Below are positions 7,151-43,072 of a DNA stretch of 46,246 nt, in pieces; positions within the stretch are counted from its first letter, which is position 1, and each line of letters opens with the position of its first letter. This DNA is from Chara braunii (lineage: Eukaryota; Plantae; Charophyceae): assembly GCA_003427395.1 (NCBI GenBank), contig BFEA01000008.1, positions 5,786,757-5,833,002 on the forward strand, given 5' to 3'. The translations under genes and the position numbers were made by a program. Under the pieces are notes generated by a model. It was given only the letters and a program-made list of their open reading frames with translations, searched no databases and had not been told where the DNA came from.

Positions 7151-8959
7151 TGCGCTTTGTCTTTTTTTTTTAACGTGTTTTGACAAAGCAACCGCTTGTT
7201 TTTTTTTTGCGCAGAAATGTTTGGCAAAACACTAGAGAAGCACCGGTTAATGCAAGCAGAAGAGAGACAAAAACTAAGTAAGCATCGCCACAAGGCTTCA
7301 AGTCATCCGTCAGAGTATGTCGCAATGATCATTGATGGGATGTATCAGAGCAAGACTATACTGCCACACTTCACTAGGGTTTCAAAGGATTCGAAACTAA
7401 AAGAAGCGAACTTTGTGAAAGTTCACGTGGTTGGGGCTAAGGTGCTAGGACTCTCATCGAACGCCTCTGCAACTGTTTTCTTTGACAACTTCAAATCAGA
7501 TTCTAATTGCATGCTAACTGTTCTTCATCGTCAGATTTCTCAACTTGCTGTACCATTTCCGAGAGTCCTGTATCTTACACTTGATAACACTTCGAAAGAG
7601 AACAAGAACAAATTTGTGCTGTCATATCTCGTGTTCTTGGTGAAAATGAGAGTATTTAGTAAAGTTAAGTTAAACTTTCTTCTTGTCCGTCACACACACG
7701 AGGACATCGACCAGATGTTCAGTTGTTTCTCGAGAAAGTTGGCTGCACATGGTGCATTCGATCTTCCTGAGTTGCAACACGTGATTAGGGAGTCGTACAA
7801 GGTAGAACAAGATCATGGCGTGCACGTTGAGGAGATGACGGAAACAATGAACTGGAAGTTGTACGTTCAGGATCATCTACATAATGTCAATGATATTAGC
7901 TTTAACCAACATTTCCGAATCAAGCGCAACGAGGACAGGGAGGTGCGCATTTGGAGCAAGCAAAATCATAATTTACAGTGGCAGCCGAGCGACAGAGAAG
8001 GTCTGGACATCTTCAAGTTAGAGCCAACAAGACAAGTTCAAGCTTCGCCAAAGCATGCACTCCGATCTTTGGAAGCAAGATATCGACTTACTTGTCGGGG
8101 TGAGGACGAAAGGCGTGATAAGGTTGTCAACAGTGAAGGTCATGTCCGTAATCGAAAAGCGGGAGGATCTTCGAAATTCAAGGTTGACGATGATGTACTT
8201 TCCATCGCCGCCTTGAAAGCCAACGTACATGCCCTGTCGCATTACGCTCAACCTCACAACATTGAATGATGGAATAAGTTCATAGCAACGCAGGAAACTA
8301 TCGACCTTGAGGACACAAACCTCAAAGAGCCATTCGCGTGGCCCTCTGTGACAGTTGATGTCAGCAGAGCAGGTGAAGAAGTTCCACAAACCGCTAATAG
8401 CTTTGACCAACGCTGGGATGATATTTTCCCTGCTGAGAGACCCATCTACATCGGCGCACGCAAGAGCAGACAGTTTCGAGAGGACAGAGACGGAAAGTAT
8501 GACGATCTCGAGGTCAACACTTTCATCGCATTACGAGCTTGTTCGGGGCAGGAAGAGAGAGGCAAACCTTACCACATTGGCAAGGTTGTCGAGCTGCTAG
8601 CAGGTAAACGATTCAAAGTTGCTTGGTTTGCACAACGTGAGAAAGGAGAGGGCTACTATCCTCAGTTCAAGACAAATCCTCAAGGAAAGAGTACGAGAGA
8701 GCCTTCCGAGGACGTCTATGACTGGAGCTGCGGCGTTCTTTGTTACAACTTCCAACTGAAGACAAACAGGACCCTTTTCTCGCAGACCAGACAAAAAATC
8801 TCTGAGATGTTGAATTCCATGGCAACGGAGGATGTCGACTAGGAAGACCTTCTAGGAACCGATTGCTTCAGAGGTTGGCAGAGTGTCATGGAGATCGAGG
8901 TCATTTCTGCTTCCGCATTACATCAGGTTTCCTTTTGTCGTTGTTCAATAGATTATCTC

Positions 8960-10793: not shown

Positions 10794-13700
10794 ATGGGGG
10801 AGCCCTATACAACAATCCCAGACCCCTCCACAACACGGCAACCAGCAAAGACAACCCAGTGGCCCTGCCCCAGCCCTCCTCGCCCAACTCCGCCCGTGAG
10901 ACGAATACCGATATGGGCAAAAAAAATTGCAAACGTAGATTTGGACATCAGAGCAATTAATGTGAACGGTCTGGCTCAGGCCAACGAACAGAAACCTAAA
11001 GCTATCTGGAACCAAATCACACAGGATACTAGAGGGGCATGGCCGGACGTGGTGGCAGTCCAAGATACCCATCTCACTGATTCCCCCACTCACAACGCCA
11101 GCGCCAAACAAATCTGGCCGCATACCTCCTTTGCGGCCCCGACCAGGGCGGTAACATCAACAGGTGTGGCCCTCTGGCTCCACCCCACAGCTAGGCTTAT
11201 CCTTGAACATGCGGAGTGGGACACAGAAGAAGGAAGATGGGTGTGGCTGAGAGCCTCATTGGGAACTGAAATAGTTTACGTAGTTAGCATATACGCGCCC
11301 AATGACCCCGGCCAAAGAGTCGCATTCTTCTCAGAGCTCCAACATTTACTCCCTCGAGATGCCCCTATCGTCATGGTGGGGGATTTCAACACAACACCTG
11401 ACGTGATGATTGATAGGCTCTCCCCCACCCACAACCCCCAAAATGCTCCTATGCACTGTGGTCCTAACATCGCAGCCTTAGGACATATGATGGCGGATCT
11501 GGGTCTCATAGACTCGCATAGGCAACTCCATCCTAGTACAAAAAAAACTTTCACGTGTATGAGGTAAAAGGGGGGGATAGAGGGATTGGGAACTCCAGGA
11601 TCGATTCGGCCCTTATCTCAGAAGAGATCTCGGGACTTCTCACAATTGCAGATATTTGCACCATCTTGCCGTGCAAGTCTTCGACCACCGCATGATAGTG
11701 ACTGGCCTATATTTCCACTCACACATAAACAAAGGCCCGAGCTACCTCAAATTCAATAATACGCTCCTTAAACTCCTTTCTTTCAACACCCTTGTTAAGG
11801 ACTTCTGGGCGTACTGGTCTGCACACAAGCCCGAGGATGATAGGCTACTCCATTGTTCAACGATGGAGTTGCACAACTACGGGAAAGGGTAAAGAAATAC
11901 TCAATCCAAAATGCGAGGGAGCGGAAGGAGAACCTCGAAAGACTCATGGCCCGCCTGGAAGAATGGGATGCCCATGTCATGGAGCAGCCTTTGGATGCGG
12001 ACACGTACGACACTCTCCAAAGGGCAAGGGCTCAACTACAAGAATATCTTGATAACCAGAACTATAAATGGAGAATCCAGACACAAATCAAGAAGGATGC
12101 AACATAAGGAATGGTGACAAAGATGTTCTTCCGTAAAGCTAAGGCTAGAAATAGACAAACACGGTTGCCTCCTTGAGGCACCCATTCGATAACAGCCAAC
12201 CACTTGCAACCAATGCCTATAAGATAGTCGAGTATGCCGCAACATATTACCAAAGATTTTTCACATCGGAAACCAACCATCATTCACCCCACACCCTGCA
12301 GACAGTCAGAGACACCCTCCTAAATGTTATCCCGTCTCTCCTCACTACTCATCAACGAGAAGCTATGGAGACACCCATCACACAGGAGGATATGTTGCAG
12401 GCCTTGACGGATATGGATGATGAGAAAACCCCAAGGATCGATTCTTTCCCCGAAGAATTTTGGCTCCACTACTGGGAGACATTTCAAGAAGATTTTTGTC
12501 AATATGTCAACGCGGTGTAATGAGAGGAGACGTTCGAGGATATGATTGGGCAAAGGATCACAACCCTCATCTACAAAAAGGGGGACAAGGAAGACATTAA
12601 AAACTGTAGGCCCATCACTCTCCTCTCGGTCTCCTGTAAAATTGTGGCAATAATTATGGGCCAACAGACTTCGCCCCCATCTCTCACATTTCATCCACCC
12701 TGATCAGTCTGGCTTTATGCCCTACCGAAACATTCAGGATAACATATCCCTAGTCAATGAAACCATCAGGTACGCAAGACAACGTAGAGTCGATGTTGCC
12801 ATCCTCTTTATTGACTTTGAAAAAGTGTATGATCATGTGGATTCGGATTTTCTGGAATTATGCCTAAACAAGATGAACTTCGGGCCTGCATTATTGAAAT
12901 GGGTAAACATACTCCACCGAACAACACCCACAAACATCATGATGAATGGACACCTTGCGCCACCAATTAGATTGCAGAGATTTGTGAGACAAGGAGACTC
13001 TATTGCCGCGATGCTATTCGTCCTGATGATGGAAGCATTGGCGACTATGATAAGGGTCAACCCTGAGATACAAATACTCGCAGTGTAGGAAATCCCGAAT
13101 CACCTTGCCCTTGTCATATCCATCTTTGCAGACGACCCCGCTGTCCTCTTCTGAGCTGACCCTGACAACTTTCAGACATTGGCATGGACAATCCACCTCT
13201 TTGAGGTCGCGACAGACATGAAAGTGGACTGGGGCACGAAGACAGAGGGATGGTGGCTCATCGGAAATGACAATCCATCACCTGATGCACCAAGGGTCGA
13301 CTGGAAACCTGAGAATGCTGCTATCAGACTCCTGGAGGTAAACCTCACCGCTTTTGGCCCCCCTCATGACTACAACGATAGACTGGTGGACATAGAAATT
13401 CAATGCATGAATGCTTGGAAATCAACACACACCTCGTTGATGGGCAGAGTATTGGCAATCAACAATGCCATATTTGCGGCTATATGGTACAAAGTGGTCT
13501 TTTGGCAATTAAGCCAGAGCCAATTAAGGACACTAAAACGGGCTGCGTCTGCCTACCTCTGGCGAGGGGACCATGAATACACCATGTGTATTAGGAGGGT
13601 GGCATGGGACATCATCACATAGCCACGAGCCAAGGGGGGGCTAGGCATAATAGACCCGGAGAATGAAACAAAAACATTGATTTTTAAGTTCCTAATAAGA

Positions 13701-15412
13701 TGGTTGTTAGGCAATGATATCCCCTGGGCAACATATACAGCCATCCAGATCTCTACCCTGACCCCACAGTGCACAGATAGCAGTCGAGTCCATCCACTGC
13801 AATGGCTAACTAACAACTACTGGTCGCTCCCGACACCTCCTCGGAACAGAAAGGACGGCACGCCCGCCTCCAATGCCAAATGAGATCTCAAAGCCGACCC
13901 CCTATGGACATATATGTTGAGGCTATGGAGAGAACAAGGACCGACTCAGAAACCTGTCCCGCTTAGATGGGACGAAATATGGAGAGTCTGACAACTTCTG
14001 TTTGGGAACCCTTTCATACTAGATCACACAGGTAATCCCTTCTCGCTGCAAACAGGCTCGAAATGACTCCCCTGGGTGAGAAAAGGTATATACACAGTGG
14101 CTGATCTGTGGAATATCCACGCAGATACGTGGCTATCGGTCCAGGACCTTTGACAAAAATTGCACCACGTCAGAAAGTCGGATGAGGGACTTCAAGAGAT
14201 CCAAGAGGCTGTCCCCCTGACATGAGTGCTGGAACTTAAAGAGGCCCGACGATACGGCAGGGGGACTGGGTGGTGAGACCAGAGGACTGGCCGATCCCCA
14301 TGGTGATATATAATGTATAGGAGGTTGGCCCTCATGAGGCGAGTCGTAGGGCGTACACACCACGCCTCCCAGGAGAAAGATGGTCCAAATTGGACCGTCA
14401 AGACGCCCGAGATCGCCAGACACCCGCCGCAGGACTCGTTAGAATATGTGTGATCAATGATAGGGGCAATGGACCCTTTGTGTATAAGCCAGTTGTACCC
14501 CTCTGCCAGCTGCCATTCGACCCTCAAGAATGGGAATGGGACAAAGGGGACTCCCATAAACTGCAGATATGGCAGTACACAGTAAAGGATGGGTACAGAA
14601 CAGCAAGAAAACCGGCACACATATCCGAACCAATCAGACTGCGGTGGGCAAGGGACTCACCTCTCAAAGCAGAAAACCTGGACACAATCAGATGGGCCTC
14701 ATACGCGACGATACGACCTACAAACCTGTGGGCACTGCAGTGGCAGATCATTAACAGGTGTCTACCCACCCCAGACTGGATTGTGTCTAGAACAAATCTG
14801 GAAGACCGGGGTGTGTTATCTCCACTCTGCACCTACTGCAGTGGGACCTCCCCCAAGAAACGAGCTACACTCGAACACTGCCTGGTGGATTGCACCATGG
14901 TCGCTCAGCTATGGCAATGGTGGGATGCAGCATGTCATCATCTAACTGGCAACCACCTCCCATGAGACCTCCAGATCATCATGTTGGGGGAAATGCCTCC
15001 GCAAAGGGCCAGGTGGACATCATTTAGTCTTAACCTGTTGGCAGTAACAAGACTACCGATGCTAATGGCGGCGTGGCTAATGAGATGTGCGCATGAGCAC
15101 AGGCAGCATACATATGGTTACATGGAGGCTCGGGCCTCGATTCTAGAAACAATCATCGTCAACACACAGGAGGCCTGGCAAGAGCTCAGAAATATGCTGC
15201 GGAAGGAATCAGACATAAACAAACAGAATAAACTCTCAGATAACTTGCGATCTATCTGGGTGGACAGTGCAGAAAAGCTCTGCGAATTGGATCATGATAA
15301 CCAGCTGCGATGGAAACAGTGGATGCTGACGGAATCAAAATGGGAAAGATTACCAAGAAGCCATTTTCAGTTCCCATTCCAACTGACCAACTTCATCCTT
15401 TTCCCGGCCTGA
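10794..15412 (+). pseudogene. LINE-A ORF2 (APE endonuclease - reverse transcriptase - CCHC zinc finger) with multiple stops and frameshifts
   Basis: EN motifs: INVNGL, VQDTH, SIYAPN, VGDFN, SRID, FDH. RT motifs: KTPRIDSFP, YKKGD...RPITLL, QSGF, DFEKVYD, VRQGD, IFADD. Also GGLG and CTYC...EHCLVDC. Confidence 0.92.
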
Positions 15413-16421: not shown

Positions 16422-19400
16422 GTGTGCTGGCACAGCCAAACCAACATCCCCCCAACCACCCGGACCAAGACCTAGCCTTAGCTGAAATGCAGGCCCAAAT
16501 ACAGACCTGGGCAGAACCCCAACCCCCACCGGCCCAGAGGTAAACACCCCAGGAGGGGAGAGGAGATGGGCACAGACTGCAGCAACCACAGTGGAGAATG
16601 GAACGAAAGGGAAGGAGGTACAACATGCTCTGCCTCCAGATGGGACACAGCCAACCCCCCAGGCCTCTCCCCTGCAACTGCAGCCAACACACAAGGCGAC
16701 ACCCGACGGCCGAAGAGGCCGAAGAGAGGACCTGTGACAACACACAGTGCCTGGAACAGGCCAAGGGACAAGCGGTCAGGAGGGACCCAACTCCCATCGT
16801 CCATGTGGCACACAGCCACAACCCCAGATCCTCAGCGGCAAATTGAAGTTAACTGAGGTGCTCTCACAAAACCTCATTCAACCAGCCGGACAGACAGGGG
16901 ATGGGGTTAGAGAGACACAATTACAACTGGACTACCAAGGGGACGTAATGCTCCACAACAACGACGATCTGTACCAACAGCTAACGGCCGGGGACCCAGT
17001 AGATCAGGACCCCGGGACTGCTTCCCCAGTTGCCCACGCAGCACTCCTCCTGTACCCGCAGCAGTCCCAATACACTACACAACACATGCTACAACAACAA
17101 GCACAACAAATGGCCCTGATGACCAGCAACCAACAGGTACAGTTGAGGCACAGGCACAAGCCTACTCCTATACACAACCACTGGCACTGCAACAGGCCAT
17201 ACTCCAAGCCCAGGCACAAGCCCAGAACCAGGAACAATCCCGCCTACAAGAACTGACCGAACAGTGGGCCCAAATGCAAGCACAGGCCCCATTGCAGCAG
17301 TCATCCTTGCAATGGGCCCATACTAACCAGGTTCCAGAGCCTCAGCTACCAGTAGACCATCAGGGCGACATTCAGCTTACCACGGAAGAAAACGATAACG
17401 AGCACCCAGGGAACATCGGAGAAACAATGAATGACAGAGATGAGCAAGGGGACCTCATACTACACCAGGAGGAATTACCCAACTCAGATGTGTTGTCAGA
17501 GGCAAGGCAGCAAGGACATGAGGAACAGGGGGAGCACCCAGCCCATGGACTAAGGGGGAAGTGGCAAAAGAATACCAAGCGAATGTCCACATGGAACAAT
17601 AAAAAGATACAAAAGCAACTCAAGGAGATGGTAGATTGGACATTACTCAAAGTTCTGTCTCCGAACTCCATCTCCTTGCACGATCGTATTCCCCCGCTGC
17701 AGTGGGAAAAAAACAGGCGCTTTATTCTCAAAAGTCAACAAATCAGACAAACGGTTGAGAGCTATGGGTCCCCAACCGAGGTGGACTGGCAGTACGTGGC
17801 CAAAAAAATCATAGCCACGATCACACAGCGCGTGGACAAAGTCTGGTCAGCAGGCCCCCAGGCACAGACATAGAAAAGCCTGATCTCTGCCCAGACAGAA
17901 CAGGCAGCTGTGCTGCACTAAGACTGCACCCAAGCTGCACTGGTCGCAGCCCCAACACCATTGGAATCTCAGATTCCACCACACCTGCTAATGCCCATGT
18001 TGCATATAGTGCCTGCACAACCTTCTGACACTGAATCGCAACAGTCGGCAGGGATTTGTCAGACAAAGTCATTGACTAACTATCCAGCCCATGCAACCAA
18101 TCAAAGTCCGACACCTCGGATAGCATGACCCAGGCTGAAGTATCAGACCAGGAGTCGGACGCCTCACAGGATCTGCAATTACCACAGGCAGCCCCCATGT
18201 TAGACTTGACTCCGTCCACCATGGACGAAACAGCTCTGACCATCAGGCCAACTACAAGAGGTAAGCTCAGAGACCTTGTCCGCTCATTGCCCACGCGTCA
18301 GACTGCACAGCCTTATGAACCACTATTAGGCCTCCTTATCCTGCCGCTGCGAAGGGACCCTCAGTCTCGCCAGTGGCAACTTGGGATGAGGAGTAAAAGT
18401 AGACTGCAGCCAGCAGTACAACAAGCATAGTGACAGCTTTGTTGGTCTTACCTTGGAAGGCTGGAGGGGAACATATGGGGAGCCGGAGGTGCTGCGCCTG
18501 GTCAGACTTCAAATTAAAGAGAACAGAGATAGAAGTGCCCTAGGGGTGGGGTTACCTTTGCATCACCCATTTCCCCCTGGTATCATCCTGGCAGTGACCT
18601 TGTTCGACTACCAGCAGTCAATAGAAGCCACAGCCAGGGACGATTCGACCGTAATCTGGTTTGCTGAGCACGAATTGCTGGCCCTGTCAGCGACCAGAAT
18701 CAAATCAAACGTTTCCTGGTGTATAACACAGATTTTAACCTTCATGCAGGTTATCCTGGAGCACAACCTCCTTGAGGCAACAAATGCCTGGGACGACACA
18801 CAAGCAATGACGAGTCTGTGAACTGCCAAGGGAGAACTTTCGCTGCTCTCCATATTGCCTGTCCCAAAAAGCTGACCCCCAAACACCCCATCAGACCCTT
18901 CCCATGCAAACTGCGGACGTCTGCCCCCTGTCGCCAGCACCAGCCCCCACTCCTATACCAGAGACCATCCCCACTCCTCTGCCGCCGTTTGTTCCACCCC
19001 CTCTTCGTAAGCCGCCAGTTTGGTCCCAGAAACTGGCACTGGCGGACCTCCACATTCATTCACTTAACCTCAACGGGCTGATGACAGCCAACAGTCATAA
19101 ACGAAATGCAACATGGAATGAGTTAAAAAAACACAGTTCCGACAATTGGCCGGATGCCATCTGCATGCAGGAGACACATCTCACCCATTCACCCAACCAC
19201 GAAGCCAAACGACAACATATTTGGCCTCATACTGCGTACTCAGCGCCGGCCACGGCAAGGCATCGGCAGGGGCTCACCCAGTACGACTATGATAGGGAGG
19301 AGGGGAGATGGGTCTACATAAAGGCAATCATTGGTGATGAACCTATTTGCGTAGCGAGTGTGTACGGACCGAACGATTCAAATGAAAGATTGTGTTTCCT

Positions 19401-21046
19401 ACAGACACTAAATCAGGTTCTTCCAAACGACTGCCCTCTAATTATCGCAGGGGACTTTAAATAGATATCGCACCAGATCTGAGTCTGGATAGGTAATCCA
19501 CATCACAACCTGCAGGTGGTGGCCCTCACACCTGATATCCTTCTGCTGAACCAGTTTATACAAGACCGTCAGTTGTGTGATATCTATAGACAACTCCATC
19601 CCTCTAAAAGAGCATACACTTGCCTAAAATTGAGGGGAACAACAGGGCTGTCCAACTAGCGAATTGACTTCTTCCTGATTGACCAGGCACTGACAGGTTT
19701 GACCACAGTTGCAGAGATACGGCCAATCAGCCCGTGCCGCTCATTCGATCATCGAGGTATAGTGCTAGGACTCTCCTTCCATAAGCAAATAACACGAGGG
19801 CCGGACTTCTATAAATTTAACTCCTCACTGCTCAAACTACCAGACCTTCAAACGCTAGTGGAACAATTCTGGAGCTACTGGACAACGAAAAAGGAGGGGG
19901 CCTCCTCAATAGTGGACTGGTTCAACTCGGGCATAGCCCACCTCAGAGAGTGTGTCAAAAAATTCTCCATACAACAGGCGCATCTAGGAAAGCCACTATA
20001 GACAAACTTCTGCACACACTCGAACAATGGGATCAAAACATGGCGGATCACCCCCTGGACCTGCCAACCTTCAACCAACTACAAGAGGTCAGGGACCATC
20101 TCCAGACTTACTATGAACGACAAGCTGCAGCCTCGAGAATCCAAGCAAGGATAAAAAAGGACAACACAAAAGGAACCATGGCCAGAGCCTTCTTCCAAAA
20201 GGCCAAAACTAGATCTAAACAAAATGTTGTGACATCCTTGCATGGCCCCTTTGACCCCCACCAACCAGAGGCCACCAACCAGTACGGGATCGTCGACTAC
20301 AAAACCAAGTATTACCAACGTCTTTTCACCTACGAAAACGGCCACTGGGGTACTGAGGCCCTCCGCGAGGCCCAAACTAACATGCTTCATAACTTGTCTG
20401 CCTTGCTATCTCAACAGCAGAAGGAGGCCTTGGAAGAGCCACTAACATCCCACGAAATTCTGGCGGCACTTACAGACATGGAAGATGAGAAAACCCCGGG
20501 CTTGGATGCCTTTCTAAGGAATTCTGGCTACACTTTTGGCCATTTCTAAACGAAGACCTCATGAAATACATCCATGCTGTTTAGGGTGAAGACCGCTTTG
20601 GCAAACTCATAAGCCAAGGTGTAACTACCTTGTTATACAAAAAACTTGAAAAAAGGAGACTGGGGGGCTAAGACGGAAGGTTGGTGGCTGCAAACAGCTA
20701 ATTTTCCACCACCAGACAATCCACAGGTCAATTGGCGTGCACAAGAGGACCCCATTCGAGTCCTGGGAGTACACCTTACAACATTGGGCCCTCCTAAAGA
20801 TCACGATGACCATCTAGTCCACACCGCCATCCAGGCCGTGGCAAAGTGGAAGGGGCTCCATACGTCCATCATGGGTAGAACCCTAACAATCAAATAATGC
20901 AATCTTGTCAACCATATGGTATAAAACGGTTTTTTGGGCCCTACTACCAAAACATAATTCTCAACTAAAAGAAGCAATGACGGCCTACCTTTGGAGGAAG
21001 ATCACGAGATTCGGACTTGCATTAAGAGGGTCGCCTGGGCCTAGAT
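16422..21046 (+). mobile_element. LINE-B, 5' part (ORF1 remnant, EN, RT with internal deletion), interrupted by LINE-C
   Basis: Starts right after the LINE-A poly(A). EN motifs LNLNGL, CMQETH, SVYGPN, IAGDF, RID and FDH lie at 18904-19800. KTPGLD at ~20490. Ends at CIKRVAWA, at the TSD. Confidence 0.88.
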
Positions 21047-21319: not shown

Positions 21320-24300
21320 TTATCCCTCCCCCCCTCCAAACCAATGAAGATCCACCAAAGNTAGCTCAGAAGGAGGAAAGAGATCTGGAAATGCTTNTGG
21401 GGACCTCAAAGTAGCTCCTGCCTGCACCTCAAACCAGTNCTGGAAGATGATCTCATAATCTCTTTTGAAATNTGTCCCATCTTCTTCCCCTCCTGACCAC
21501 TCTATCTTTCCCAGTTTTTGTNTTGAGGAGTCTCCCAGCCAGTCCTTTGTGAAANTTTGAATTNTTTTCTTAANGTCNTGTTTTTGTTGTAGTGTGTGAA
21601 GTCCANATTTAATCTTGTCCCATTGGGATCTTANTTCTGTTTCAATGTATTGTTGAATAAGCTCAGACATTTCTTTTCCTTCAATCCTTACCTTTTCCAT
21701 CGTAATTACACATCTTTTATACCATAGTGCCCATAAAATGNCCTTTCTACCAATGTTAAATAAATTTTGTTGAAAGGTTGAAAGGGAAATGAGTACAGGA
21801 CACCAATGTCCCAGGAGGATCGCCCTCCAGTCCCANGGCCAATCTAATCCTGTCAATTTGTTCCATACATAATCCCATCGTCTCCACAATAATTTTGCTC
21901 CCGGACATTGCAAAAAGATGTGTTCGATTGTCTCNCTAATCTTNCTATTAGGAAAGTTTTNCATACATGTACAACACCACGGTAGAGCTACACCCCTTTG
22001 CTCCAGCGTGGTATGGTCTATCAACCAGTCATTTGTTGGTAAACATCTATGGATAATTTGCCATTGTAGTGATGCAAATTTAGCGGGTTTGTCTCTGAAA
22101 GCTTCACACCACTTAATTGGCCTAAGCAACAAATCTGTGCATATATTTAGATGTCGGGCCCGTCGTTCCCGTATTATGTCTATAACATCAAGCTTTGGAC
22201 GTAATAGACGATACGAGACTTTGACTGATAATGATTGTAATTTCTGCGCCTTGCATCTCCTGTTAGTGCGCAAGGTCCATTCTGCTGGATCCAGGGGGAG
22301 TTCCTGTAGGGGAGTATTCGGGGCATATACAGTCCATCCTTTAGATATAGGACAATACAAAGCTCTTACTCTGTGGAGAGTATGAAGATGGAAAAATCCT
22401 ACCTTATCTTGATTTTCTTGTGATAGAGAAAAGTCCTTATTGAGTGTAACGATGTTAACTAGGGCGCCATCGTTATGGATATCTAGAATTTTCCCCACTA
22501 CCTTGAAACCCGTCGTTTGCTGAGCACATACCCAATTTGCAGCCAAGAAAATAGGACCCTTTCTCAGGGCGGCTAACCAAACCAAAGGAATGGATGAAAT
22601 CACTAAATCCATATTTTCAGCTAGATTGTGTGCATATCTAATTACCTTTCTCAGTTGATTAACTGATTTTCAATTTTTATTTTCCTGGTCCCATAAATCC
22701 TTGATCCTTACCACACCATGTTTGACCCAAATGGACCATGGGGATGTGGAACTTATGAATACTCTTCCTTGTGCATCCGTGATCCATCTATTACCAAAAA
22801 TTGGTTGGCNTAGGATTTNCTNATACCTAGTAGGAATTGATTTGTTTGGCAAAGGCAAATTTCGCCAAGTTCTCAGTAGGGTAGCCCAAAAACTGTNTAA
22901 AACCNGATCCCTTCTTACTATCCCTCCATCCCCTTCCTTCTGAGATTGTGATTGTGATCGAGGAATAGACCAGTATCTGTCCTCTACCCAAATCAATGGA
23001 TTGACATCTTTTGTAGTTTGTGGAGCCATTTTCCTTATTTGTTCCAGTGCCAATGCCTGCCAAGTTAGGTCCGTGATCAATATTAGTTTTTTTAGCCATT
23101 GGAGAGCAAGTGCTTGGCATTGGATTGAAGGGTCCAAAATGCCCAATCCTCCTTTGGACTTTGGTTGGATAAGAACCTTCCAAGCTACTCTAGGGATTAC
23201 ATGTGACGTTTCATGATCTCCTCTCCATAAGAAGGCTGTAAGTTGCATCCATAAGTTCCTTGATTGATCTATTACTTATTGACCATAAAGCAGATTTGTA
23301 CCAGATCGAGGCCAAGATTACGTTGTTGATAACCAAAGCCCTACCGAATAGTGAAGTGTGTTGATTTTTCTATTGCTTCATTTTTTGTAAGGCTGGGGAA
23401 GTGATCCATTCATCATTAGAATTAGGCTTTCCTCTAGCTGTGAGTATTACTCCCAAGACCCTGATTGGTGCCTCTAATGGTAACCATTTTACCCTAGGAT
23501 TCTCAGGAGGTCTATCCCCTTGGGAATGAATCNNNNNNNNNNNNNNNNNNNNNNNNNNNNNNNNNNNNNNNNNNNNNNNNNNNNNNNNNNNNNNNNNNNN
23601 NNNNNNNNNNNNNNNNNNNNNNNNNNNNNNNNNNNNNNNNNNNNNNNTTGGGAATGAATCAACCATCTTTGTGTCTTACTCCCCCAATTGACTACCATAT
23701 CTGAAAGAAGATAAAATTTATCCATTAGTGCTTTTATTTCTTTCATATTCTCCTTGGATGTTTCCATCATTATAGTTAGGTCATCAGCAAACATAGAGCA
23801 AATCGGTATGGCTTCTTCAGGTATTCCGGTAATCTGCAGTCTTTTAAGGTTCTGGTTAGTTCTTAGATTAGCTCCTAATGCTTCCATTATAATCAAAAAA
23901 ATAAATGGAGCTAATGGATCTCCTTGTATAACTGATCTCTGTAAACTGATTTCTGGGGAAAGAAGACCATTGACCTGAACCCTAGTAGTAGCATTTGAAT
24001 GAAGGATAGTAGCCCATCTACGAATTGATGGACCAAAATTTAACTTAATTAAGCAAGCGTCCAAAAACTTTCAGTCTACATGATCATAAACTTTCTCAAA
24101 GTCTATAAAGACAAATGCAGTTTTTTGGTGATTTTGTCGAGAAAGCTTAATCATTTCATTAATGAGCAAAATATTATCCTGTATGTTCCTTTCATTAATG
24201 AACCCCGTTTGGGAGGGATGAATGATATCTGTCATTATTGGAATGAAACGATTCGCGATAGCTTTGGCCAACATTTTGTACACTACCGTGAGTAGGGTGA

Positions 24301-25949
24301 TGGGTCTATAATTCCTTATGTTCGTTTTATCTCCTTTTTTGTATAACAAGGTTAAAATCTCTTGCCCAACTATTTCCCCCATGCTTCCCATCTCCTGGAC
24401 TTGGTTGTAGAATTTCATCAAATCGTCTGCAAAATATGGCCACATTGTTTCCTAGAATTTTTTAGGGAGACCGTCGAAACCCGGAGTTTTATCTTATTTC
24501 ATCTGCATTAACGCAGTCCAGATTTCTTCCTTAGTGATAGGTTCTTCCAATCTTTCCTTTTGTCTTTGTGTTAATTCCTGAAAGATTTTTGAAGAAGTCA
24601 TATGCCACCTTCAGACTACTGGCTGAAGTGGTAGTTTCTTGCTATGATATCTGTTGTGGATCCTTTAAAGCTTCAATAGACGTTCTTCTAGCTCTGGTGC
24701 GAGCCAAAGAAAAGAAAAATGTTTTCATTTGACCTTCTATCGAATGTTTGAAGAGTTTTCCTCTGATGAGTTGACCTTGCCAACGATGTCGCGCAAAGGT
24801 TAGTAGTTGATTTCTGAATGTTAGAATATCAACTGGTTGAGATACTTGTTGTGGACAGTCTTCTTGCTCATTTTTAAGAATTTTCTCCTGAATTTTCATT
24901 TTCTGCTTATATCTTTCTTTGGCAATTAACTTAGAATATTCATTGCATTTTTTAGCTAAATAAACTAACCCATTACTGAACCATGCTATATATGATTCAT
25001 GTCTTTCTTTGGTAGAATGCCAGAAGCTCCATACATCCTGAAGAAACGTTTTGAAATCCTTTCGTTTGAGAAGGGAGGTGTTGAGTTTGTAGAAACCTCT
25101 GCCTTGATCTGGTTTCTTACGAAAGGACAGTAAAACTGCACACATTTTATGATCTATTCTTTTCCATGGGCTTAAGGAAAAAATATTAACGTCCGTTAAA
25201 ACACAGTTTAAGTCTTCAGATATAAGAATAAGATCTATGCTTGATCTTGATTGGTGAGTAGAGCCATCATTTCTAATGCACGTATATGTCCTCTCCTGTG
25301 GGCAAAACCGCCTATATGTATCAAACAAATTTTCTGATTCACAAAGATGTTGAATAATTTGCTCCTCCTCCTCTATATATGTAGGAGATGGAGAAGGGAT
25401 TCTCCATCTGTCCAACCATCTGTCTGGTGCAACATTAAATTCGCCTGCTATGATGATTGAAACACCCTTAGGAATATGGTTTCTAATACTTTGAAAGAAT
25501 TCTTTACGTTTCTGTAATACATTAGGCCCATAAATATTTAGGACACAAATTATTTTCAATTCAAACATTACTAACGTGACCAGCCATCGACCCTGTTCTT
25601 GATCAGCTTTGCAGTATACAATTTCTATCCTAGAATCCGGTGGTACCCAAATAGCCACCCCTGCCGACCCATTGGTTGTGGAATAAGCTTGGTATTTCTG
25701 AGGGAGCCAAGCTAAATTGTGCATTCTATTGTGTTTCGGGGAGTTTAAGAGATGTGTTTCCTGGATACAAATTAGGTCAGGTCAACACCTCCCACCCACT
25801 CCTTTCAATTGTTCCATAATGGTCTTACGTTTCATAGCATCTGTTGTGGCCAGACCATTAACATTGAGGGATCTTAGGTCCAGATCTGCATTTTGAGTAG
25901 CACGCAACCATCCCGGATTTTTACCATAAAGGGTCTGTAGTGCTTCCAT
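21320..25949 (-). pseudogene. LINE-C ORF2 (APE endonuclease - RT - CCHC), disrupted
   Basis: Start MEALQTLYGKNPGW...LNVNGL (ATG at 25949). EN motifs: IQETH, NIYGPN, IAGEFN, SSIDL, IDH. RT motifs: YKKGDKTNIRNYRPITLL, QTGF, DFEKVYD, QGDPLAP, MFADD. Also KGGLG and CCTC...ETIEHIFLQC. Confidence 0.92.
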
Positions 25950-37330: not shown

Positions 37331-38275
37331 TTCAGAAATTCAAAATGTAGGAATTTAGGTATTAAAAATATCAATCATCTTAGTTCTAGGAGTTGAGACT
37401 TACGATGATTCATGAATATTCTGGAGCATTATTTAGAAATTTAGAAATTTAATTTTGATAATTAATTAGGATATTATTAATAGACAGAGTAGAATGGTTA
37501 TTAGGATGATTATATGTATGATGATTGGATGTTGATTAGCTCTGATGTGGTTACCATGCACGAGCAGACAACACACAAGCAGGCAACGTTAGCATGCAAG
37601 TAGTCAACGCTCAAGCAGCCAGCGCACGAACAGCCAGCACGCTAGTAGCTAGCGCATGAGGAACCATCATGCGCGGAGCCAGCACACTAGTAAGTAGCCA
37701 GCACAACTTCCAGCACCCACACAACCATGCCCGACATTGCCCGCTGACCATATCGAGGAAGATTGGCTCTGCTCTATTGACATTCAAATAAGAACAAAAG
37801 AGAACAAAACAGATGATATTTTGAAAAAAAGAAAAAATGTGAGATGCACCTCCCCCTCCCTCTTTTCTCTAAGAATCTCTAATCCCTACCCCTCTCACAC
37901 TACCTCATCTCCTCCCACTCTCCCTTCCCCCTCCTACATATTCAGCCCCCTCCCCCATCCTCCCCTTCTCCACTTTCTACCTACGAATCCCCCTCGGCGG
38001 CGGCCATCCGCGGACGAGTCCGCGGCCGCGGCCTAGGCCGCGACCCTGCGGACGTGTCCGCGCGGCCGCGCGACTTTGCGGCCGCATGGCGGCCAGTGGG
38101 GAGGGGGGTTTGGGATTTGGGAAGCGCCATGGGGCGGCGCAACCCCAGCCCCACCCCCTCAAAGAAAAAAGAAAAAAAAAGAAAGCAAATTTTTCGGTGG
38201 GGGGTTTGGGTGAGTGAAGGTATTTCAAAAAAAAAAAAAAAAAAAAAAACAGCGTTTTTTTTGTTTTTTCTTTTC

Positions 38276-38332
<57 letters not shown>

Positions 38333-38432
38333 CCCCACAGGCACACACACACACACACACACACACATAGGTAGGATTGTATATTCCCATGTCCTAGCCG
38401 AAGATTCATTTGATTTTGCTTTTTTTTTTTTC

Positions 38433-38480
<48 letters not shown>
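38276..38480. repeat. (ATTG)n x2 and (CA)n microsatellites
   Basis: (ATTG)n at 38276-38331 and 38433-38480. (CA)n at 38342-38367. Confidence 0.95.
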
Positions 38481-38482
<2 letters not shown>

Positions 38483-39706
38483 GGGGGTGGGGTCGCCCCC
38501 CCACCCNNNNNNNNNNNNNNNNNNNNNNNNNNNNNNNNNNNNNNNNNNNNNNNNNNNNNNNNNNNNNNNNNNNNNNNNNNNNNNNNNNNNNNNNNNNNNN
38601 NNNNNNNNNNNNNNNNNNNNNNNNNNNNNNNNNNNNNNNNNNNNNNNNNNNNNNNNNNNNNNNNNNNNNNNNNNNNNNNNNNNNNNNNNNNNNNNNNNNN
38701 NNNNNNNNNNNNNNNNNNNNNNNNNNNNNNNNNNNNNNNNNNNNNNNNNNNNNNNNNNNNNNNNNNNNNNNNNNNNNNNNNNNNNNNNNNNNNNNNNNNN
38801 NNNNNNNNNNNNNNNNNNNNNNNNNNNNNNNNNNNNNNNNNNNNNNNNNNNGTATGTCCTCCCCTTGATTTTTTCTAAGTCTTTTTGTGTGCCCAATTGA
38901 GCACCCTTAAGTAGTGCCAAACAGTCGGTGGTTCCTCGTTTGGAGTGCGAACTGCACTCTTAGGGGGGCTGCTCGGTTCGGGATGTCTGTGTTGCCTGTC
39001 AGTGATGACGGATGGTCGTCGGAATGTCCCCCTGGCACAGCGGGTGGTGGGAACCAACAGTCTGTGGGGTTCTATCGTGATGTGAGTAGGTCATGTGCTG
39101 CTTTGCTCCGTGTTCGATGTGTAGACTGTTTTGTCTGCGCTCTGCCACGATCTTGCTGCTCGTGCCGCTTGCTTTGCAGGTCGTCCTCGCTACTCTGCTG
39201 CCTTGCCGCTTGCCTGTGGGTCGTGCCTCCCGTGTCTTTTGCTCGCGTGCCTTGTGGTTTGGTAGCCTTGTGGTGGTGCCTCGCGCTTCGCTGCACGGTT
39301 GCTGAGCTGCTTGTCCGTGTGCCCTGTCGGTCTTCAGTGTCCTTTGCGTGCATGCCTTGTAGTCTGGTTGCCTTATTGGTGGTGCCTTGTGCTTCACTGC
39401 ACGGTTGCCGAGCTGCTCGTCTGCTTGCCCTGCTGGCCTTCCGCGTCCCTTACTTGCTTGTGTGCCTTGTAGTCTCGTCGCCTTGCTCATGTTGCCTTGC
39501 GCTGCACCGCACGGTTGCCGAGCTGCTCGTCCGCTTGCCCTGTCATTCCTTGCAGTCGTCTTTGGTGATAAGCAGTTGAGTTGCCTCTACTGTGTTGCCT
39601 GGTGCTCCTCAGGGTTGCTGCCCGATGCTATGTCCCGCTTGGGGACAGTCTGCCTTCAACATGGGTCAAAGGGTTCATGACCCAAACCATCAAATACGGG
39701 GATTCC

Positions 39707-39766
39707 ACAGATTGTCGAGGGTTCAGCCTCCTGATGAGTCGGTGCAACTCCGACGAAACAGTCTGT
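39707..39766 (+). ncRNA. Type III hammerhead ribozyme, intact core, predicted cleavage after C39716
   Basis: ACAGAUUGU-C^-GAGG-guucag-CCUC-CUGAUGA-GUCGG-ugcaacu-CCGAC-GAA-ACAGUCUGU. Stems I (4 bp), II (5 bp) and open III (9 bp) all pair, and the CUGAUGA, GAAA and GUC core elements are all present. Confidence 0.93.
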
Positions 39767-41618
39767 CATCACCAACGTTTGTTTATTTTATTTTTTTCGC
39801 TCTCCGTTTTTCCAACTTGGTATCAGTACTTGTGTCTCTTTCGCTTCTTGCTTTGTTGGTTACCTGCCCGCCCTCCTCCCCCATGTCCTCCACCCGTGAC
39901 TTGCAACCTCTTGTTGTCCAGTGCCTTGTTACCTCGCCATCATCTGCCTCACTATGTTTTGCCTTAAACGGCCTTTGCATCTTGCTATTCCATGAGTATC
40001 TTAGTCGGGCGCATGGGAACTCCTAACCTTTTTATGAGCCTTGACAAGAGCAAGCGCGAAAGAGCGTATGAAGGGATGTGTCAGATCTCCTCTGTTGGTC
40101 AGTACACCAACCTTGATGGTTATGCCATCGTTGCTCCCCGCTCTTCCTAACACCCTAATCTGCTCCCCCTAATTAATCCTCCACTTTCCTATGGAGTTGA
40201 TAACTACGGGATTACCCTTCCGGGTCTTCCCCCTAACCTGTGCTATGTTAAGCCTGCAGCTAACACTACGTGACGCTACGTTTGGACTGAAGGATGGTCT
40301 GGTTCCCCATGATTATGGGGCTGTCGTGTTATACACACCCATTACGCACATACCCGGATACATTATCCAGTTGATGAGCAGGGGTAGACTCCCCTGCTGA
40401 CCGACCTGATGTCTTGCCCAACGTCCTTCCACGTTCCTTAACTTTATGCAGAACAACATACTAACCGCACATTACCTCTCTTCTCTCGAAATGTCTCGAG
40501 TTCCACATAAGCTAACCTCTGGCAAATGCTTCTCCCATGCGAACAAAGGCCAATGTTTTTCGTGAAGTACATACTCGTTGCTTTGCTGGTATCAGTTGTG
40601 TATGTGTTTGTCTGTTTGTGTGTGCGGAGTCCAGGGGCATGTGGCTGAATGGCCTAGTGCCCCAGGACACTAGTCCATCCGGCCCGTCCTCATGGAGGGA
40701 TAGGGGAGGGACAGACACACACACACAGACAATCAGTTTTATGTTGTTGGTCCTCCTTCTGTCGTATGTCCTCCCCTTGATTTTTTCTAAGTCTTTTTGT
40801 GTGCCCAATTGCGCACCCTTAAGTAGTGCCAAACAGTCGGTGGTTCCTCGTTTGGAGTGCAAACTGCACTCTTAGGGGGGCTGCTCGGTTCGGGACGTCT
40901 GTGTTGCCTGTCGGTGATGACGGATGGTCGTTGGAGTGTCCCCCTGGCTCAACGGGTGGTGGGAACCAACAGTCTACGAGGTTCTATCGTGATGTGAGTA
41001 GGTCATGTGCTGCTTTGCTTCGTGTTGGATGTGTAGACTGTTTTGTCTGCACTCTGCCACGGTCTTGTTGCTCGTGCCGCTTGCTTTGCAGGTCGTCCTC
41101 GCTGCTCTGCTGCCTTGCCGCTTGCCTGCGGGTCGTGCCTCCCGTGTCTTTTGCTTGTGTGCCTTGTGGTTTGGTAGCCTTGTGGTGATGCCTTGCGCTT
41201 CGCTGCACGGTTGCTGAGCTTCTTGTCCGTGTGCCCTGTCGGCCTTCAGTGTCCTTTGCGTGCATGCCTTGTAGTCTGGTTGCCTTGTTGGTGGTGCCTT
41301 GTGCTTCACTGCACGGTTGCCGAGCTGCTCGTCTGCTTGCCCTGCTGGCCTTCCGCGTCCCTTACTTACTTGTGTGCCTTGTAGTCTCGTCGCCTTGCTA
41401 ATGTTGCCTTGCGCTGCACCGCACGGTTGCCGAGCTGCTCGTCCACTTGCCCTACCATTCCTTGCAGTCGTCTTTGGTGATAAGCAATTGAGTTGCCTCT
41501 ACTGTGTTGACTGGTGCTCCACAGGGTTGCTGCCGGTTGCTATGTCCCGCTTGGGGACAGTCTGCCTTCAACATGGGTCAAAGGGTTCATGACCCAAACC
41601 ATCAAATACGGGGATTCC

Positions 41619-41678
41619 GCAGATTGTTGAGGGTTCCGCCTCCTGATGAGTCGGTGCAATTCCGACAAAACAGTCTGT
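41619..41678 (+). ncRNA. Type III hammerhead ribozyme, second copy, core mutated (GAAA->AAAA; GUC->GUU)
   Basis: GCAGAUUGU-U-GAGG-guuccg-CCUC-CUGAUGA-GUCGG-ugcaauu-CCGAC-AAA-ACAGUCUGU. Confidence 0.85.
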
Positions 41679-43072
41679 CATCACCAGCGTTTGTTTATTT
41701 TATTTCTTTCGCTCTTCGTTTTTTCAACTTGGTATCAGTACTTGTGCCTCTTTCGCTTCTTGCTTTGTGCTGGTTACCTGCCCGCCCTCCTCCCCCNTGT
41801 CCTCCACCCTATGTGACTTGCAACTTCTTGTTGTCCAGTGCCTTGTTACCTCGCCATCATCTGCCTCATTGTGTTTTGCCTTAAACGGCCTTTGCATCAT
41901 GCTATTCCATGGGTACCTTAGTCGGGCGCATCGGAACTCCTAACCCTCTAATGAGCCTTGACGAGAGCAAGCGCCAAAGAGCGTATGAAGAGATGTGCCA
42001 TCCCTCCTCTGTTGGTCAGTACACCAACCTTGATGGTTATGCCATCGTTGCTCCCTGCTCTTCCTAATACCCTAATCTGCTTCCCCCTAATTAATCATCC
42101 ACTTTCCTATGGAGTTGATGACTATGGGATAACCCTTCCGGGTCTTCCCCTTAACCTGTGCTATGTTAAGCCTGCAGCTAACACTTAGTCTACGTGATGC
42201 TACGTTTGGACTGAAGGATGGTCTGGTTCCCCATGATTATGGGGCTGCCGTATTATACACACCCATTACACACACACNNNNNNNNNNNNNNNNNNNNNNN
42301 NNNNNNNNNNNNNNNNNNNNNNNNNNNNNNNNNNNNNNNNNNNNNNNNNNNNNNNNNNNNNNNNNNNNNNNNNNNNNNNNNNNNNNNNNNNNNNNNNNNN
42401 NNNNNNNNNNNNNNNNNNNNNNNNNNNNNNNNNNNNNNNNNNNNNNNNNNNNNNNNNNNNNNNNNNNNNNNNNNNNNNNNNNNNNNNNNNNNNNNNNNNN
42501 NNNNNNNNNNNNNNNNNNNNNNNNNNNNNNNNNNNNNNNNNNNNNNNNNNNNNNNNNNNNNNNCCAACCAAAAATCCCCCCAAAAAATAAAACTTTTTTT
42601 TTTATATTTATTTTTCAATTTCTCTTCTCCACCTTTTCTGTTTTTTATTTTTTAAAATTCTAAAAACTTATTTGTTTCCAAAAAAAAATAAATGGGGTTA
42701 TAGGGACTAAAAATCCCTACAACCCTATATATATATATATTTTTTTTTTACCCATGATTTAATTCAGGGAAAATAAAGTAAATTCACGTCCGCGACGCGG
42801 ACGAGGTCGGTCGCGGACGCGGCCGTATATACGCCCGACATCCGAGCTCGACCCCGTGGACGCGTCCGCGGGTGTTTCATAGCTTTCTACCATCCTCTCC
42901 CTCCATCTCCCATCTCCTACCCCAGAAAAAGGAGGGTGAAGTAGAAGGGTATGAAAGAGGAGGGAAAGAAGGAGAAAGACTACCGATGAAAAGAGGTAAC
43001 GAAGAAGGGATGATAATGATAATGATGATGAAGAAGTTGTTACCCTTCTAAAAGAGTGTCTCCCTTCTCAGT

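What the first reader, a model, noticed from the sequence alone, without database searches (positions are those of the whole stretch)
38852..42277. Non-coding 1.9-kb tandem repeat punctuated by type III hammerhead ribozymes: a candidate new retrozyme family
Seen: a hammerhead with a complete core at 39707-39766, a homolog exactly 1912 bp downstream, and no protein-coding signal in the unit. Loop I (GUUCAG) and loop II (UGCAACU) are complementary (GUU/AAC), as expected for the loop-loop contact of natural hammerheads. Known: plant retrozymes are non-autonomous retroelements with type III hammerheads whose transcripts self-cleave to unit length and circularise. Penelope-like elements also carry hammerheads and form head-to-tail partial tandems. 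Inference: a transcript cleaved at consecutive hammerheads would give a 1912-nt monomer or circRNA. That is longer than the roughly 1 kb or smaller retrozyme RNAs I recall. The head-to-tail layout lacks clear TG...CA LTRs. The unit contains a CA-rich tract (40711-40730) and copy 2 ends in (CA)n, hinting at CA-microsatellite-associated insertion.
Basis: partly seen in the sequence, partly recalled or inferred. Interest (0 to 1): 0.85.

Follow-up and report, generated by a model that had tools for sequence, protein, structure and literature searches.

The report
Long hammerhead-ribozyme repeat unit in Chara
Two head-to-tail copies of a 1.9-kb non-coding repeat, one with an intact and one with a broken self-cutting hammerhead RNA motif, are probably an old, unusually long relative of the ribozyme-carrying Penelope-like jumping elements already known in the alga Chara braunii, not a plant-type retrozyme.

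Summary
Window 38852-42277 is a contig island between two N gaps. It holds 1.8 head-to-tail copies of a 1912-bp non-coding unit, about 95% identical.

Copy 1 has a complete type III hammerhead (39707-39766, cut after C39716). Rfam RF00008 scores it 44.3 bits, E 1e-7, just under the gathering score of 48.5. The copy 1912 bp downstream is dead: core G12 is changed to A, and GUC to GUU. This locus therefore cannot release a 1912-nt monomer.

Public Chara reads show that the ribozyme module and the ~900 bp upstream of it belong to very abundant, transcribed families. The ~900 bp downstream are low-copy at 90% identity or more, and almost silent in poly(A) RNA.

A second contig (L001) carries a related unit as a 1448-bp cycle. 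It has the same block order, a different core, and no TGGTATCAG motif.

Best reading (0.55): a non-autonomous element of the Penelope-like (Chlamys) type, resembling a non-LTR retrozyme. Hammerhead-bearing Chlamys elements and their (CA)n targeting are published for Chara (Craig et al. 2021). A plant LTR retrozyme is unlikely.

Self-cleavage, circular RNA and the reverse-transcriptase partner are inferred, not shown. The scan has met shorter relatives (135-497 bp units) many times in this genome.

The parts
38852..40763 (+). Copy 1 of the 1912-bp unit; the contig starts inside the array, just after an N gap
   Evidence: Self-BLAST and alignment A1
40764..42277 (+). Copy 2, partial (about 1.5 kb), runs into an N gap; 94-95% identical to copy 1
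39707..39766 (+). Type III hammerhead ribozyme with intact core; predicted cut between C39716 and G39717
   Evidence: RF00008 44.3 bits, E 1e-7; minimum-energy fold is the hammerhead junction
41619..41678 (+). Hammerhead homolog, inactive: GUU cut site, G12>A (CAAAAC), one change in each loop
   Evidence: RF00008 20.1 bits; list of differences
38852..39706 (+). Module A: an A-poor stretch upstream of the ribozyme. Its conserved blocks are high-copy and transcribed at family level
   Evidence: Summed contig depth 36-88 thousand, against 12-28 for single contigs; strand-biased poly(A) RNA reads; composition
39220..39544 (+). Three internal 110-bp sub-repeats (also 41132-41453 in copy 2); their number varies between family members
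   Evidence: Tandem Repeats Finder; L001 is shorter here
39777..39797 (+). T-rich tract just after the ribozyme; the truncated copy in L002 ends about here
   Evidence: Sequence; L002 5847-6163
39965..40528 (+). Variable core of module B: low-copy, silent, and not homologous to the related unit in L001
   Evidence: Depth 100-500 and about zero RNA; BLAST against L001
40597..40738 (+). Conserved structured domain with a (TG)n-like arm (40605-40624) and a (CA)n arm (40716-40735) around two hairpins
   Evidence: Inverted repeat I1; fold -71 kcal/mol, z -4.66, 0 of 200 shuffles as stable; conserved in L001
39818..39826 (+). TGGTATCAG, resembling a tRNA-Met primer-binding site (also at 40587-40595 and 41730-41738); probably not functional
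   Evidence: 3 matches against 0.34 expected; absent at both homologous places in L001
38507..38851 (.). N gap hiding the left end of the array (the right gap is 42278-42563)

Best explanation
The block is an old, partial head-to-tail pair of a non-coding, non-autonomous retroelement. It belongs to the hammerhead-bearing Penelope-like (Chlamys) lineage of Chara braunii, and is in effect a very long 'non-LTR retrozyme' with a type III ribozyme.

Proposed cycle:
1. Transcription reads through head-to-tail copies.
2. The hammerhead near the 3' end of each unit cuts after GUC (C39716), setting RNA ends.
3. A Penelope-like reverse transcriptase supplied in trans copies the RNA into nicked DNA, often at microsatellites. 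Template jumps or a multimeric or circular template then give new head-to-tail arrays.

Shown here:
- The ribozyme motif and its fold.
- The head-to-tail layout at two independent loci with different unit lengths.
- The lack of coding capacity.
- Family-level abundance and transcription of the ribozyme and upstream modules.

Inferred: self-cleavage, circularisation, the identity of the reverse transcriptase, and the target preference.

This particular locus is decayed. The copies differ by about 5%, one ribozyme is dead, and almost no reads match at 99% identity or more.
For: - Hammerhead.
- Uniform divergence of the two units.
- Second locus L001. Its first 86 nt equal its last 86 nt, giving a period of 1448. 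It has the same block order (module A, ribozyme, T-rich tract, post-ribozyme block, core, hairpin domain, module A) but a different core. Different family members therefore each form head-to-tail arrays.
- L002, a Chara braunii scaffold, holds a 5'-truncated fragment that ends about 24 nt after the ribozyme. It abuts an inverted partial copy that runs into (TG)n(GA)n. This is the kind of tandem/inverted complexity described for Penelope-like elements.
- Reads: the ribozyme module has summed contig depth of about 780 thousand. Many family copies diverge or start at 39717-39727 next to TA- or CA-rich DNA.
- Literature (PMC8557442): Chlamys-2_cBra has a canonical 3' hammerhead. Chlamys elements target (CA)n. 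[quoted passage not shown]
- Animal non-LTR retrozymes are derived from the pseudo-LTRs of Penelope-like elements (preprint 10.64898/2026.07.22.740005).
Against: - No autonomous Chlamys sequence was available, so 3'-end homology to a reverse-transcriptase-encoding partner is untested.
- Both ends of the array lie in gaps, so there is no target-site duplication and no proven microsatellite target.
- Module B is low-copy at 90% identity or more. The 1.9-kb unit as such may therefore be rare or restricted to one locus.
- No excess of RNA ends at 39717 and no circle junctions in poly(A) libraries.
- The strand of the module A transcripts is unresolved. If the library is dUTP-stranded, they are antisense to the ribozyme.
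- Five hammerhead copies show no compensatory changes.
- No Penelope-like protein domains were found in the window ORFs tested.
Confidence: 0.55

Rival explanations
1. A DNA-level tandem repeat or small satellite. A composite stretch (an abundant ribozyme-bearing element plus neighbouring low-copy DNA) was duplicated by replication slippage or unequal exchange. The hammerhead is a passenger, and the 1.9-kb unit never moved as RNA.
For: - Only about 2 units, bounded by gaps.
- Divergence is even across both modules.
- Module B is 100-fold less deep than module A and is silent.
- No target-site duplication, poly(A) tail or other retro-insertion mark is visible.
- L001's self-overlapping contig fits any near-identical tandem array.
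Against: - A related unit with a different length and core also sits head-to-tail, with the same block order, in another contig.
- The edges of module B and the hairpin domain are conserved between the two, so module B is part of the family unit and not random flank.
- Truncated and inverted fragments lie elsewhere (L002).
- The depth contrast partly reflects the 90% cut-off. L001's module B parts are only 83-86% identical.
Confidence: 0.27
2. A plant-type LTR retrozyme mobilised by Ty3-gypsy elements. Module A would be a ~1-kb LTR carrying the hammerhead, TGGTATCAG the tRNA-Met primer-binding site, the purine tract 40694-40715 the polypurine tract, and the locus an LTR-internal-LTR-internal recombinant.
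For: - TGGTATCAG lies 51 nt (53 bases start to end) after the ribozyme. It occurs only inside the unit (3 matches against 0.34 expected).
- A purine-rich tract lies near the boundary between modules B and A.
- Module A is far more abundant than module B, as solo LTRs would be.
- Plant retrozymes carry type III hammerheads (PMC4918200).
Against: - The motif matches the primer-binding site over only 9-10 nt. It occurs a second time at a place with no such role, and is absent from both homologous places in L001.
- About 30-70 nt separate the purine tract from any possible LTR start.
- There are no clean TG...CA ends.
- About 1.5 kb, not 300-400 bp, is repeated, and internal sequence follows the second 'LTR' again.
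- Family copies truncated at the ribozyme lie next to microsatellites, which points to non-LTR insertion (L002b).
Confidence: 0.08
3. An assembly artefact: two alleles or dispersed copies wrongly scaffolded in tandem.
For: The island is gap-bounded in a short-read scaffold. Penelope-like tandems are known to confuse such assemblies (PMC8557442).
Against: The junction between copy 1 and copy 2 (around 40764) lies inside one continuous contig with no N. The copies differ by 5%. A relative shows the same cyclic order in another assembly.
Confidence: 0.03

Closest known systems
Hammerhead-bearing Chlamys Penelope-like elements of Chara braunii (Chlamys-2_cBra) and non-autonomous Chlamys elements such as MRC1 of Chlamydomonas (Craig et al. 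2021, PMC8557442)
   Same: Same host. A canonical hammerhead towards the 3' end. Head-to-tail (pseudo-LTR or multicopy) arrangement. Association with (CA)n. Non-autonomous forms without an ORF are known in this clade.
   Different: There is no ORF here, and no shared 3' end with an autonomous element has been shown. Non-autonomous, hammerhead-bearing forms are not described for Chara in that paper.
Metazoan non-LTR retrozymes (Cervera and de la Pena 2020, PMC7229834; Li et al. 2026 preprint 10.64898/2026.07.22.740005)
   Same: Non-coding head-to-tail repeats with one hammerhead per unit. No LTR, primer-binding site or polypurine tract. Thought to derive from the pseudo-LTRs of Penelope-like elements.
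   Different: Those carry type I hammerheads, have units of 51-972 bp (mostly 150-450), have low GC content and occur in animals. Here the hammerhead is type III, the units are 1448-1912 bp, GC is about 52%, and the host is a streptophyte alga. Circular RNA has not been shown.
Plant LTR retrozymes (Cervera et al. 2016, PMC4918200)
   Same: Type III hammerhead, non-coding, green lineage.
   Different: Those have 300-400-bp LTRs, a tRNA-Met primer-binding site, a polypurine tract, 4-bp target-site duplications, 600-1000-nt highly paired circular RNAs, and mobilisation by Ty3-gypsy elements. None of these was met here.

Membership tests
Type III hammerhead ribozyme (Rfam RF00008) | Conserved core CUGAUGA...GAAA and an NUH cleavage triplet | tested here: met
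   Copy 1 has GUC, CUGAUGA and GAAA. Copy 2 fails, with GAAA changed to AAAA.
Type III hammerhead ribozyme (Rfam RF00008) | Three-way junction with helix III open and helices I and II closed by loops | tested here: met
   The cmscan alignment and the minimum-energy fold agree. In five copies 92% of cells are paired, with no compensatory changes.
Type III hammerhead ribozyme (Rfam RF00008) | Score at or above Rfam's gathering threshold (48.5 bits) | tested here: not met
   44.3 bits, E 1.1e-7; blank at the gathering threshold.
Type III hammerhead ribozyme (Rfam RF00008) | Self-cleavage activity | not testable with these tools
   Needs in vitro transcription. The poly(A) reads show no pile-up of ends at 39717.
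Plant LTR retrozyme | Two 300-400-bp LTRs, each with a hammerhead, flanking a unique 300-600-bp core | tested here: not met
   About 1.5 kb of a 1912-bp period is repeated, and internal sequence follows the second ribozyme again.
Plant LTR retrozyme | tRNA-Met primer-binding site next to the 5' LTR, and a polypurine tract next to the 3' LTR | tested here: inconclusive
   A 9-nt TGGTATCAG and a purine tract exist. The motif is duplicated, is not conserved in L001, and the spacing is wrong.
Plant LTR retrozyme | 4-bp target-site duplications | not testable with these tools
   Both ends lie in N gaps.
Plant LTR retrozyme | Highly base-paired unit-length RNA | tested here: not met
   The 1912-nt monomer is 61% paired against 62% in shuffles, z -2.7.
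Non-LTR retrozyme (derived from Penelope-like elements) | Non-coding head-to-tail repeats with one hammerhead per unit | tested here: met
   Window; relative L001 with period 1448.
Non-LTR retrozyme (derived from Penelope-like elements) | Type I hammerhead and a unit under about 1 kb | tested here: not met
   Type III hammerhead; units of 1912 and 1448 bp.
Non-LTR retrozyme (derived from Penelope-like elements) | Unit-length circular RNA | not tested
   Only poly(A) and contig data were laid; nothing diagnostic appeared.
Non-autonomous Chlamys Penelope-like element | 3' end shared with an autonomous family that encodes GIY-YIG nuclease and reverse transcriptase | not testable with these tools
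   No Chara Penelope-like sequence could be fetched. None was found in the window ORFs tested.
Non-autonomous Chlamys Penelope-like element | 5' truncation, tandem/inverted insertions, microsatellite targets | tested here: inconclusive
   L002 has a truncated plus an inverted copy next to (TG)n(GA)n. Loose read ends at 39722-39727 lie next to TA or CA repeats. This locus's own ends are hidden in gaps.

The most novel reading that the evidence does not exclude
Chara carries a lineage of long (1.4-1.9 kb) non-coding retrozymes with type III hammerheads. They are cut to unit length, circularised, and copied by a Chlamys-type Penelope-like reverse transcriptase into head-to-tail arrays. These would be the first non-LTR retrozymes in the green lineage. 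They would link the plant (type III, LTR) and animal (type I, Penelope-derived) retrozyme worlds.
Probability: 0.3. Interest if true: 0.7.

Novelty: new variant of a known kind. Interest (0 to 1): 0.4.

Why it matters
Retrozymes are described in two forms: plant LTR elements with type III hammerheads, and animal elements with type I hammerheads derived from Penelope-like elements. A streptophyte alga that combines a type III hammerhead with the non-LTR, head-to-tail, microsatellite-linked lifestyle would show that the ribozyme type and the mobilising machinery are not tied together. It would also raise the upper size limit of such units to about 2 kb.

This single locus is old and half-dead. 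Its value is as a well-preserved ribozyme copy and a long family member. It is not a discovery on its own.

Tried and rejected
- Rfam at the gathering threshold was blank; the hammerhead appears only with the E-value threshold.
- A second hammerhead-like motif at 40350-40415 was rejected. There is no RF00008 hit even at E<=10 in a 161-bp search.
- The search for homologous proteins with two unit ORFs and with P0002 found nothing new. Given the tool's length filter, this says little.
- A metagenome scan for the ribozyme pattern gave 0 hits.
- Exact look-ups of two window LINE ORFs, meant to confirm the source record, found nothing on record.
- The organism is therefore inferred. The evidence is homology at 83-86% identity to a BFEA01 scaffold, which PMC10419180 names as Chara braunii, plus the earlier scan notes.
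- Similarity between the left and right flanks (a host element or target duplication): none found.
- The idea that the (TG)n...(CA)n hairpin is a later MITE-like insertion flanked by ATCAGTT was dropped. The domain is conserved, in place, in L001.
- A viroid-like rod structure for the monomer was rejected.
- Covariation support for the hammerhead: none with five copies.
Full report
WHAT IS THERE

Window 38852-42277 is a 3426-bp contig island between two runs of N (38507-38851 and 42278-42563). It is a head-to-tail repeat. The unit 38852-40763 recurs at 40764-42277 with offset 1912 and 94.3% identity over 1514 columns.

Identity is even along the unit: 95.8% upstream of the ribozyme, 93.1% in it and 94.2% downstream. 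Transitions dominate the differences. The whole unit was therefore duplicated in one event, long ago, and is not a collapsed or misjoined assembly. The junction lies inside continuous sequence.

Each unit contains:
- three 110-bp sub-repeats;
- a strongly A-poor upstream half;
- no recognisable coding capacity. Ten ORFs give no Pfam match at E<=1, and two of them give no homologs.

THE RIBOZYME

Rfam's default scan is blank. With the E-value threshold, RF00008 (hammerhead type III) matches 39709-39764 at 44.3 bits, against a gathering score of 48.5. The E-value is 1.1e-7 for the region and 1.5e-6 for the window.

- The core is complete: GUC then the cut, CUGAUGA and GAAA.
- The minimum-energy fold of 39709-39766 is the canonical junction. 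Helix III extends to 9 bp, helix I is 4 bp with loop GUUCAG, and helix II is 5 bp with loop UGCAACU.
Nothing tests it.
- With 70 nt more of upstream sequence, a copy of the quasi-palindromic ACAGUCUG (39646-39653) competes for helix III, and the hammerhead is no longer the minimum-energy fold. This may matter for regulation, but it is not significant against shuffles.

The homolog 1912 bp downstream scores 20.1 bits. It has GUC>GUU, G12>A (CGAAAC>CAAAAC) and one change in each loop. From established hammerhead biochemistry, G12 is essential. Double cleavage to a 1912-nt monomer therefore cannot happen at this locus.

WHOSE GENOME AND WHICH FAMILY

Earlier notes of this scan name the genome as Chara braunii. 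I checked this in three ways:
- A unit ORF found two database proteins.
- Their contigs hold relatives of the unit at 83-93% identity. These are L002, from BFEA01000655.1, and L001, from BFBZ01011546.1.
- PMC10419180 cites BFEA01 scaffolds as Chara braunii.

Craig et al. 2021 (PMC8557442) report for this species:
- very abundant Chlamys Penelope-like elements;
- one type (Chlamys-2_cBra) with a canonical 3' hammerhead;
- Chlamys insertion bias for (CA)n;

READS (threshold 90% identity)

In contigs of a DNA run, single contigs have depths of 12-28. Summed depths are:

| Region | Summed depth |
|---|---|
| Ribozyme bin | about 780 thousand |
| Conserved blocks of the upstream module A | 36-88 thousand |
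| 110-bp sub-repeat zone | 2-5 thousand |
| Downstream module B (39772-40691) | 100-900 |

These are not copy numbers, but they rank the parts. The contrast is partly an effect of the cut-off: in the relative L001, module B parts are only 83-86% identical.

No position inside the copy 1 ribozyme appears among the near-fixed differences that are listed, whereas flanking positions do (39625, and 41637 in copy 2). Copy 1 therefore seems to carry the family's majority ribozyme. This is indirect, because the table is truncated.

In two oligo-dT RNA libraries:
- Module A has depths of tens to about 140 with a strong strand bias. The ribozyme bin has hundreds to about a thousand on both strands. Module B has about zero.
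- Only 4 and 12 reads are 99% or more identical, so expression is at family level and is not shown for this locus.
- The library chemistry is unknown. If it is dUTP-stranded, the module A transcripts are antisense to the ribozyme.
- There is no pile-up of RNA ends at 39717 and no circle-specific joint.
- Many reads and contigs leave the reference at 39717/39718, where the loose sequence is a diverged homolog of our upstream sequence. Others leave at 39722-39727, where it is TA- or CA-rich. Behind 39768 the loose sequence is a conserved relative of our T-rich continuation.

A SECOND AND A THIRD LOCUS

L001 is a 1534-bp contig whose first 86 nt equal its last 86 nt exactly, giving a period of 1448. 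That means a tandem array of near-identical units, or a circle.

- Its block order is the same as in the window: 5' part of module A (86-90%), fewer sub-repeats, pre-ribozyme plus ribozyme (93%), T-rich tract, a post-ribozyme block reaching window position ~39965, an unrelated core of 310 bp (563 bp in the window), the hairpin domain 40528-40765 (83%), then module A again.
- Its hammerhead scores 37.1 bits. It has a GUA cut site and a G.U closing pair in helix II.
- Head-to-tail organisation is therefore a property of the family, not of this one locus. Module B's edges and the hairpin domain belong to the unit.
- TGGTATCAG, which in the window lies 51 nt (53 bases start to end) after the ribozyme and again at 40587 (3 matches against 0.34 expected), is absent from both homologous places in L001. 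This undercuts the primer-binding-site reading.

L002 holds a 5'-truncated fragment (unit positions 39476-39790) that ends about 24 nt after a damaged hammerhead. It abuts an inverted partial copy that runs into (TG)n(GA)n and a gap. L002 also has a solitary dead hammerhead next to CA-rich and (CGCC)n DNA. This tandem/inverted, microsatellite-linked pattern is what is described for Penelope-like elements.

INTERPRETATION

- Most likely (0.55): a non-autonomous element of the Penelope-like (Chlamys) type, resembling a non-LTR retrozyme but with a type III hammerhead and a very long unit.
- DNA-level tandem duplication of a composite stretch remains a serious rival (0.27). The ends are hidden, module B is rare, and no retro-insertion mark is visible.
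- The plant LTR-retrozyme layout fails on LTR structure, on conservation of the primer-binding-site motif, on spacing, and on RNA pairing (61% paired, the same as shuffles).
- An assembly artefact is unlikely.

Self-cleavage, circularisation and the reverse-transcriptase partner are inferences.

NOVELTY

Hammerhead-bearing Penelope-like elements in Chara are published, and the scan has already met shorter head-to-tail relatives with units of 135-497 bp. What is new here is modest:
- the longest unit so far (1.9 kb, with a 1.45-kb relative), beyond the size ranges reported for retrozymes (PMC5680766, PMC7229834, preprint 10.64898/2026.07.22.740005);
- a fully canonical ribozyme copy;
- a conserved structured domain inside the unit.

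I found no paper describing non-coding hammerhead repeats in Chara. The library searched is limited to open-access papers.

Noticed in passing
window 40597-40738; L001 1192-1335: A conserved, very stable RNA/DNA fold: -71 kcal/mol, z -4.66, none of 200 shuffles as stable. It has (TG)n-like and (CA)n arms around two hairpins. Its centre (GGCTGAATGGCCTAGTGCCCCAG.ACACTAGTCCATCCGGCC) is about 95% conserved between the window and L001, more than its surroundings. Its function is unknown; it could be a promoter, a recognition signal for reverse transcriptase, or a small-RNA source.
   Followed up: partly
L002 6001-8353 (BFEA01000655.1): The gene model on record at this place, P0001 (562 aa, with a trypsin domain), begins with about 200 residues translated from the ribozyme module and an inverted module A copy. 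This is probably a mis-annotated or exonised repeat.
   Followed up: partly
window 39818-39826, 40587-40595, 41730-41738: TGGTATCAG(T), resembling a tRNA-Met primer-binding site, occurs only inside the unit, at two places per unit. It is not conserved in the relative L001.
   Followed up: yes
window 39646-39661 and 39758-39774: The 3' strand of helix III (ACAGTCTG..., quasi-palindromic) is duplicated 113 nt upstream. It can pair with either partner, giving a possible alternative fold that masks the ribozyme.
   Followed up: partly
window 10794-11567, 14390-14965, 18904-19464, 21320-25724 (-): Several LINE fragments with AP-endonuclease, reverse-transcriptase and zf-RVT domains, plus a DUF7869 ORF at 7196-8269. 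No Penelope-like or LTR-element proteins appeared among the ORFs tested.
   Followed up: partly
window 38268-38481 and 38343-38368: The left flank of the array is full of simple repeats: (GATT)n twice, (CA)13 and long A runs. The right flank (42564-42760) is A/T-rich with (TA)n.
   Followed up: no
L001 1-86 and 1449-1534: The contig ends overlap exactly. The 1448-bp relative is either a near-identical tandem array or a circular molecule in that assembly (GCA_003427375.1, whose organism label I did not verify).
   Followed up: partly
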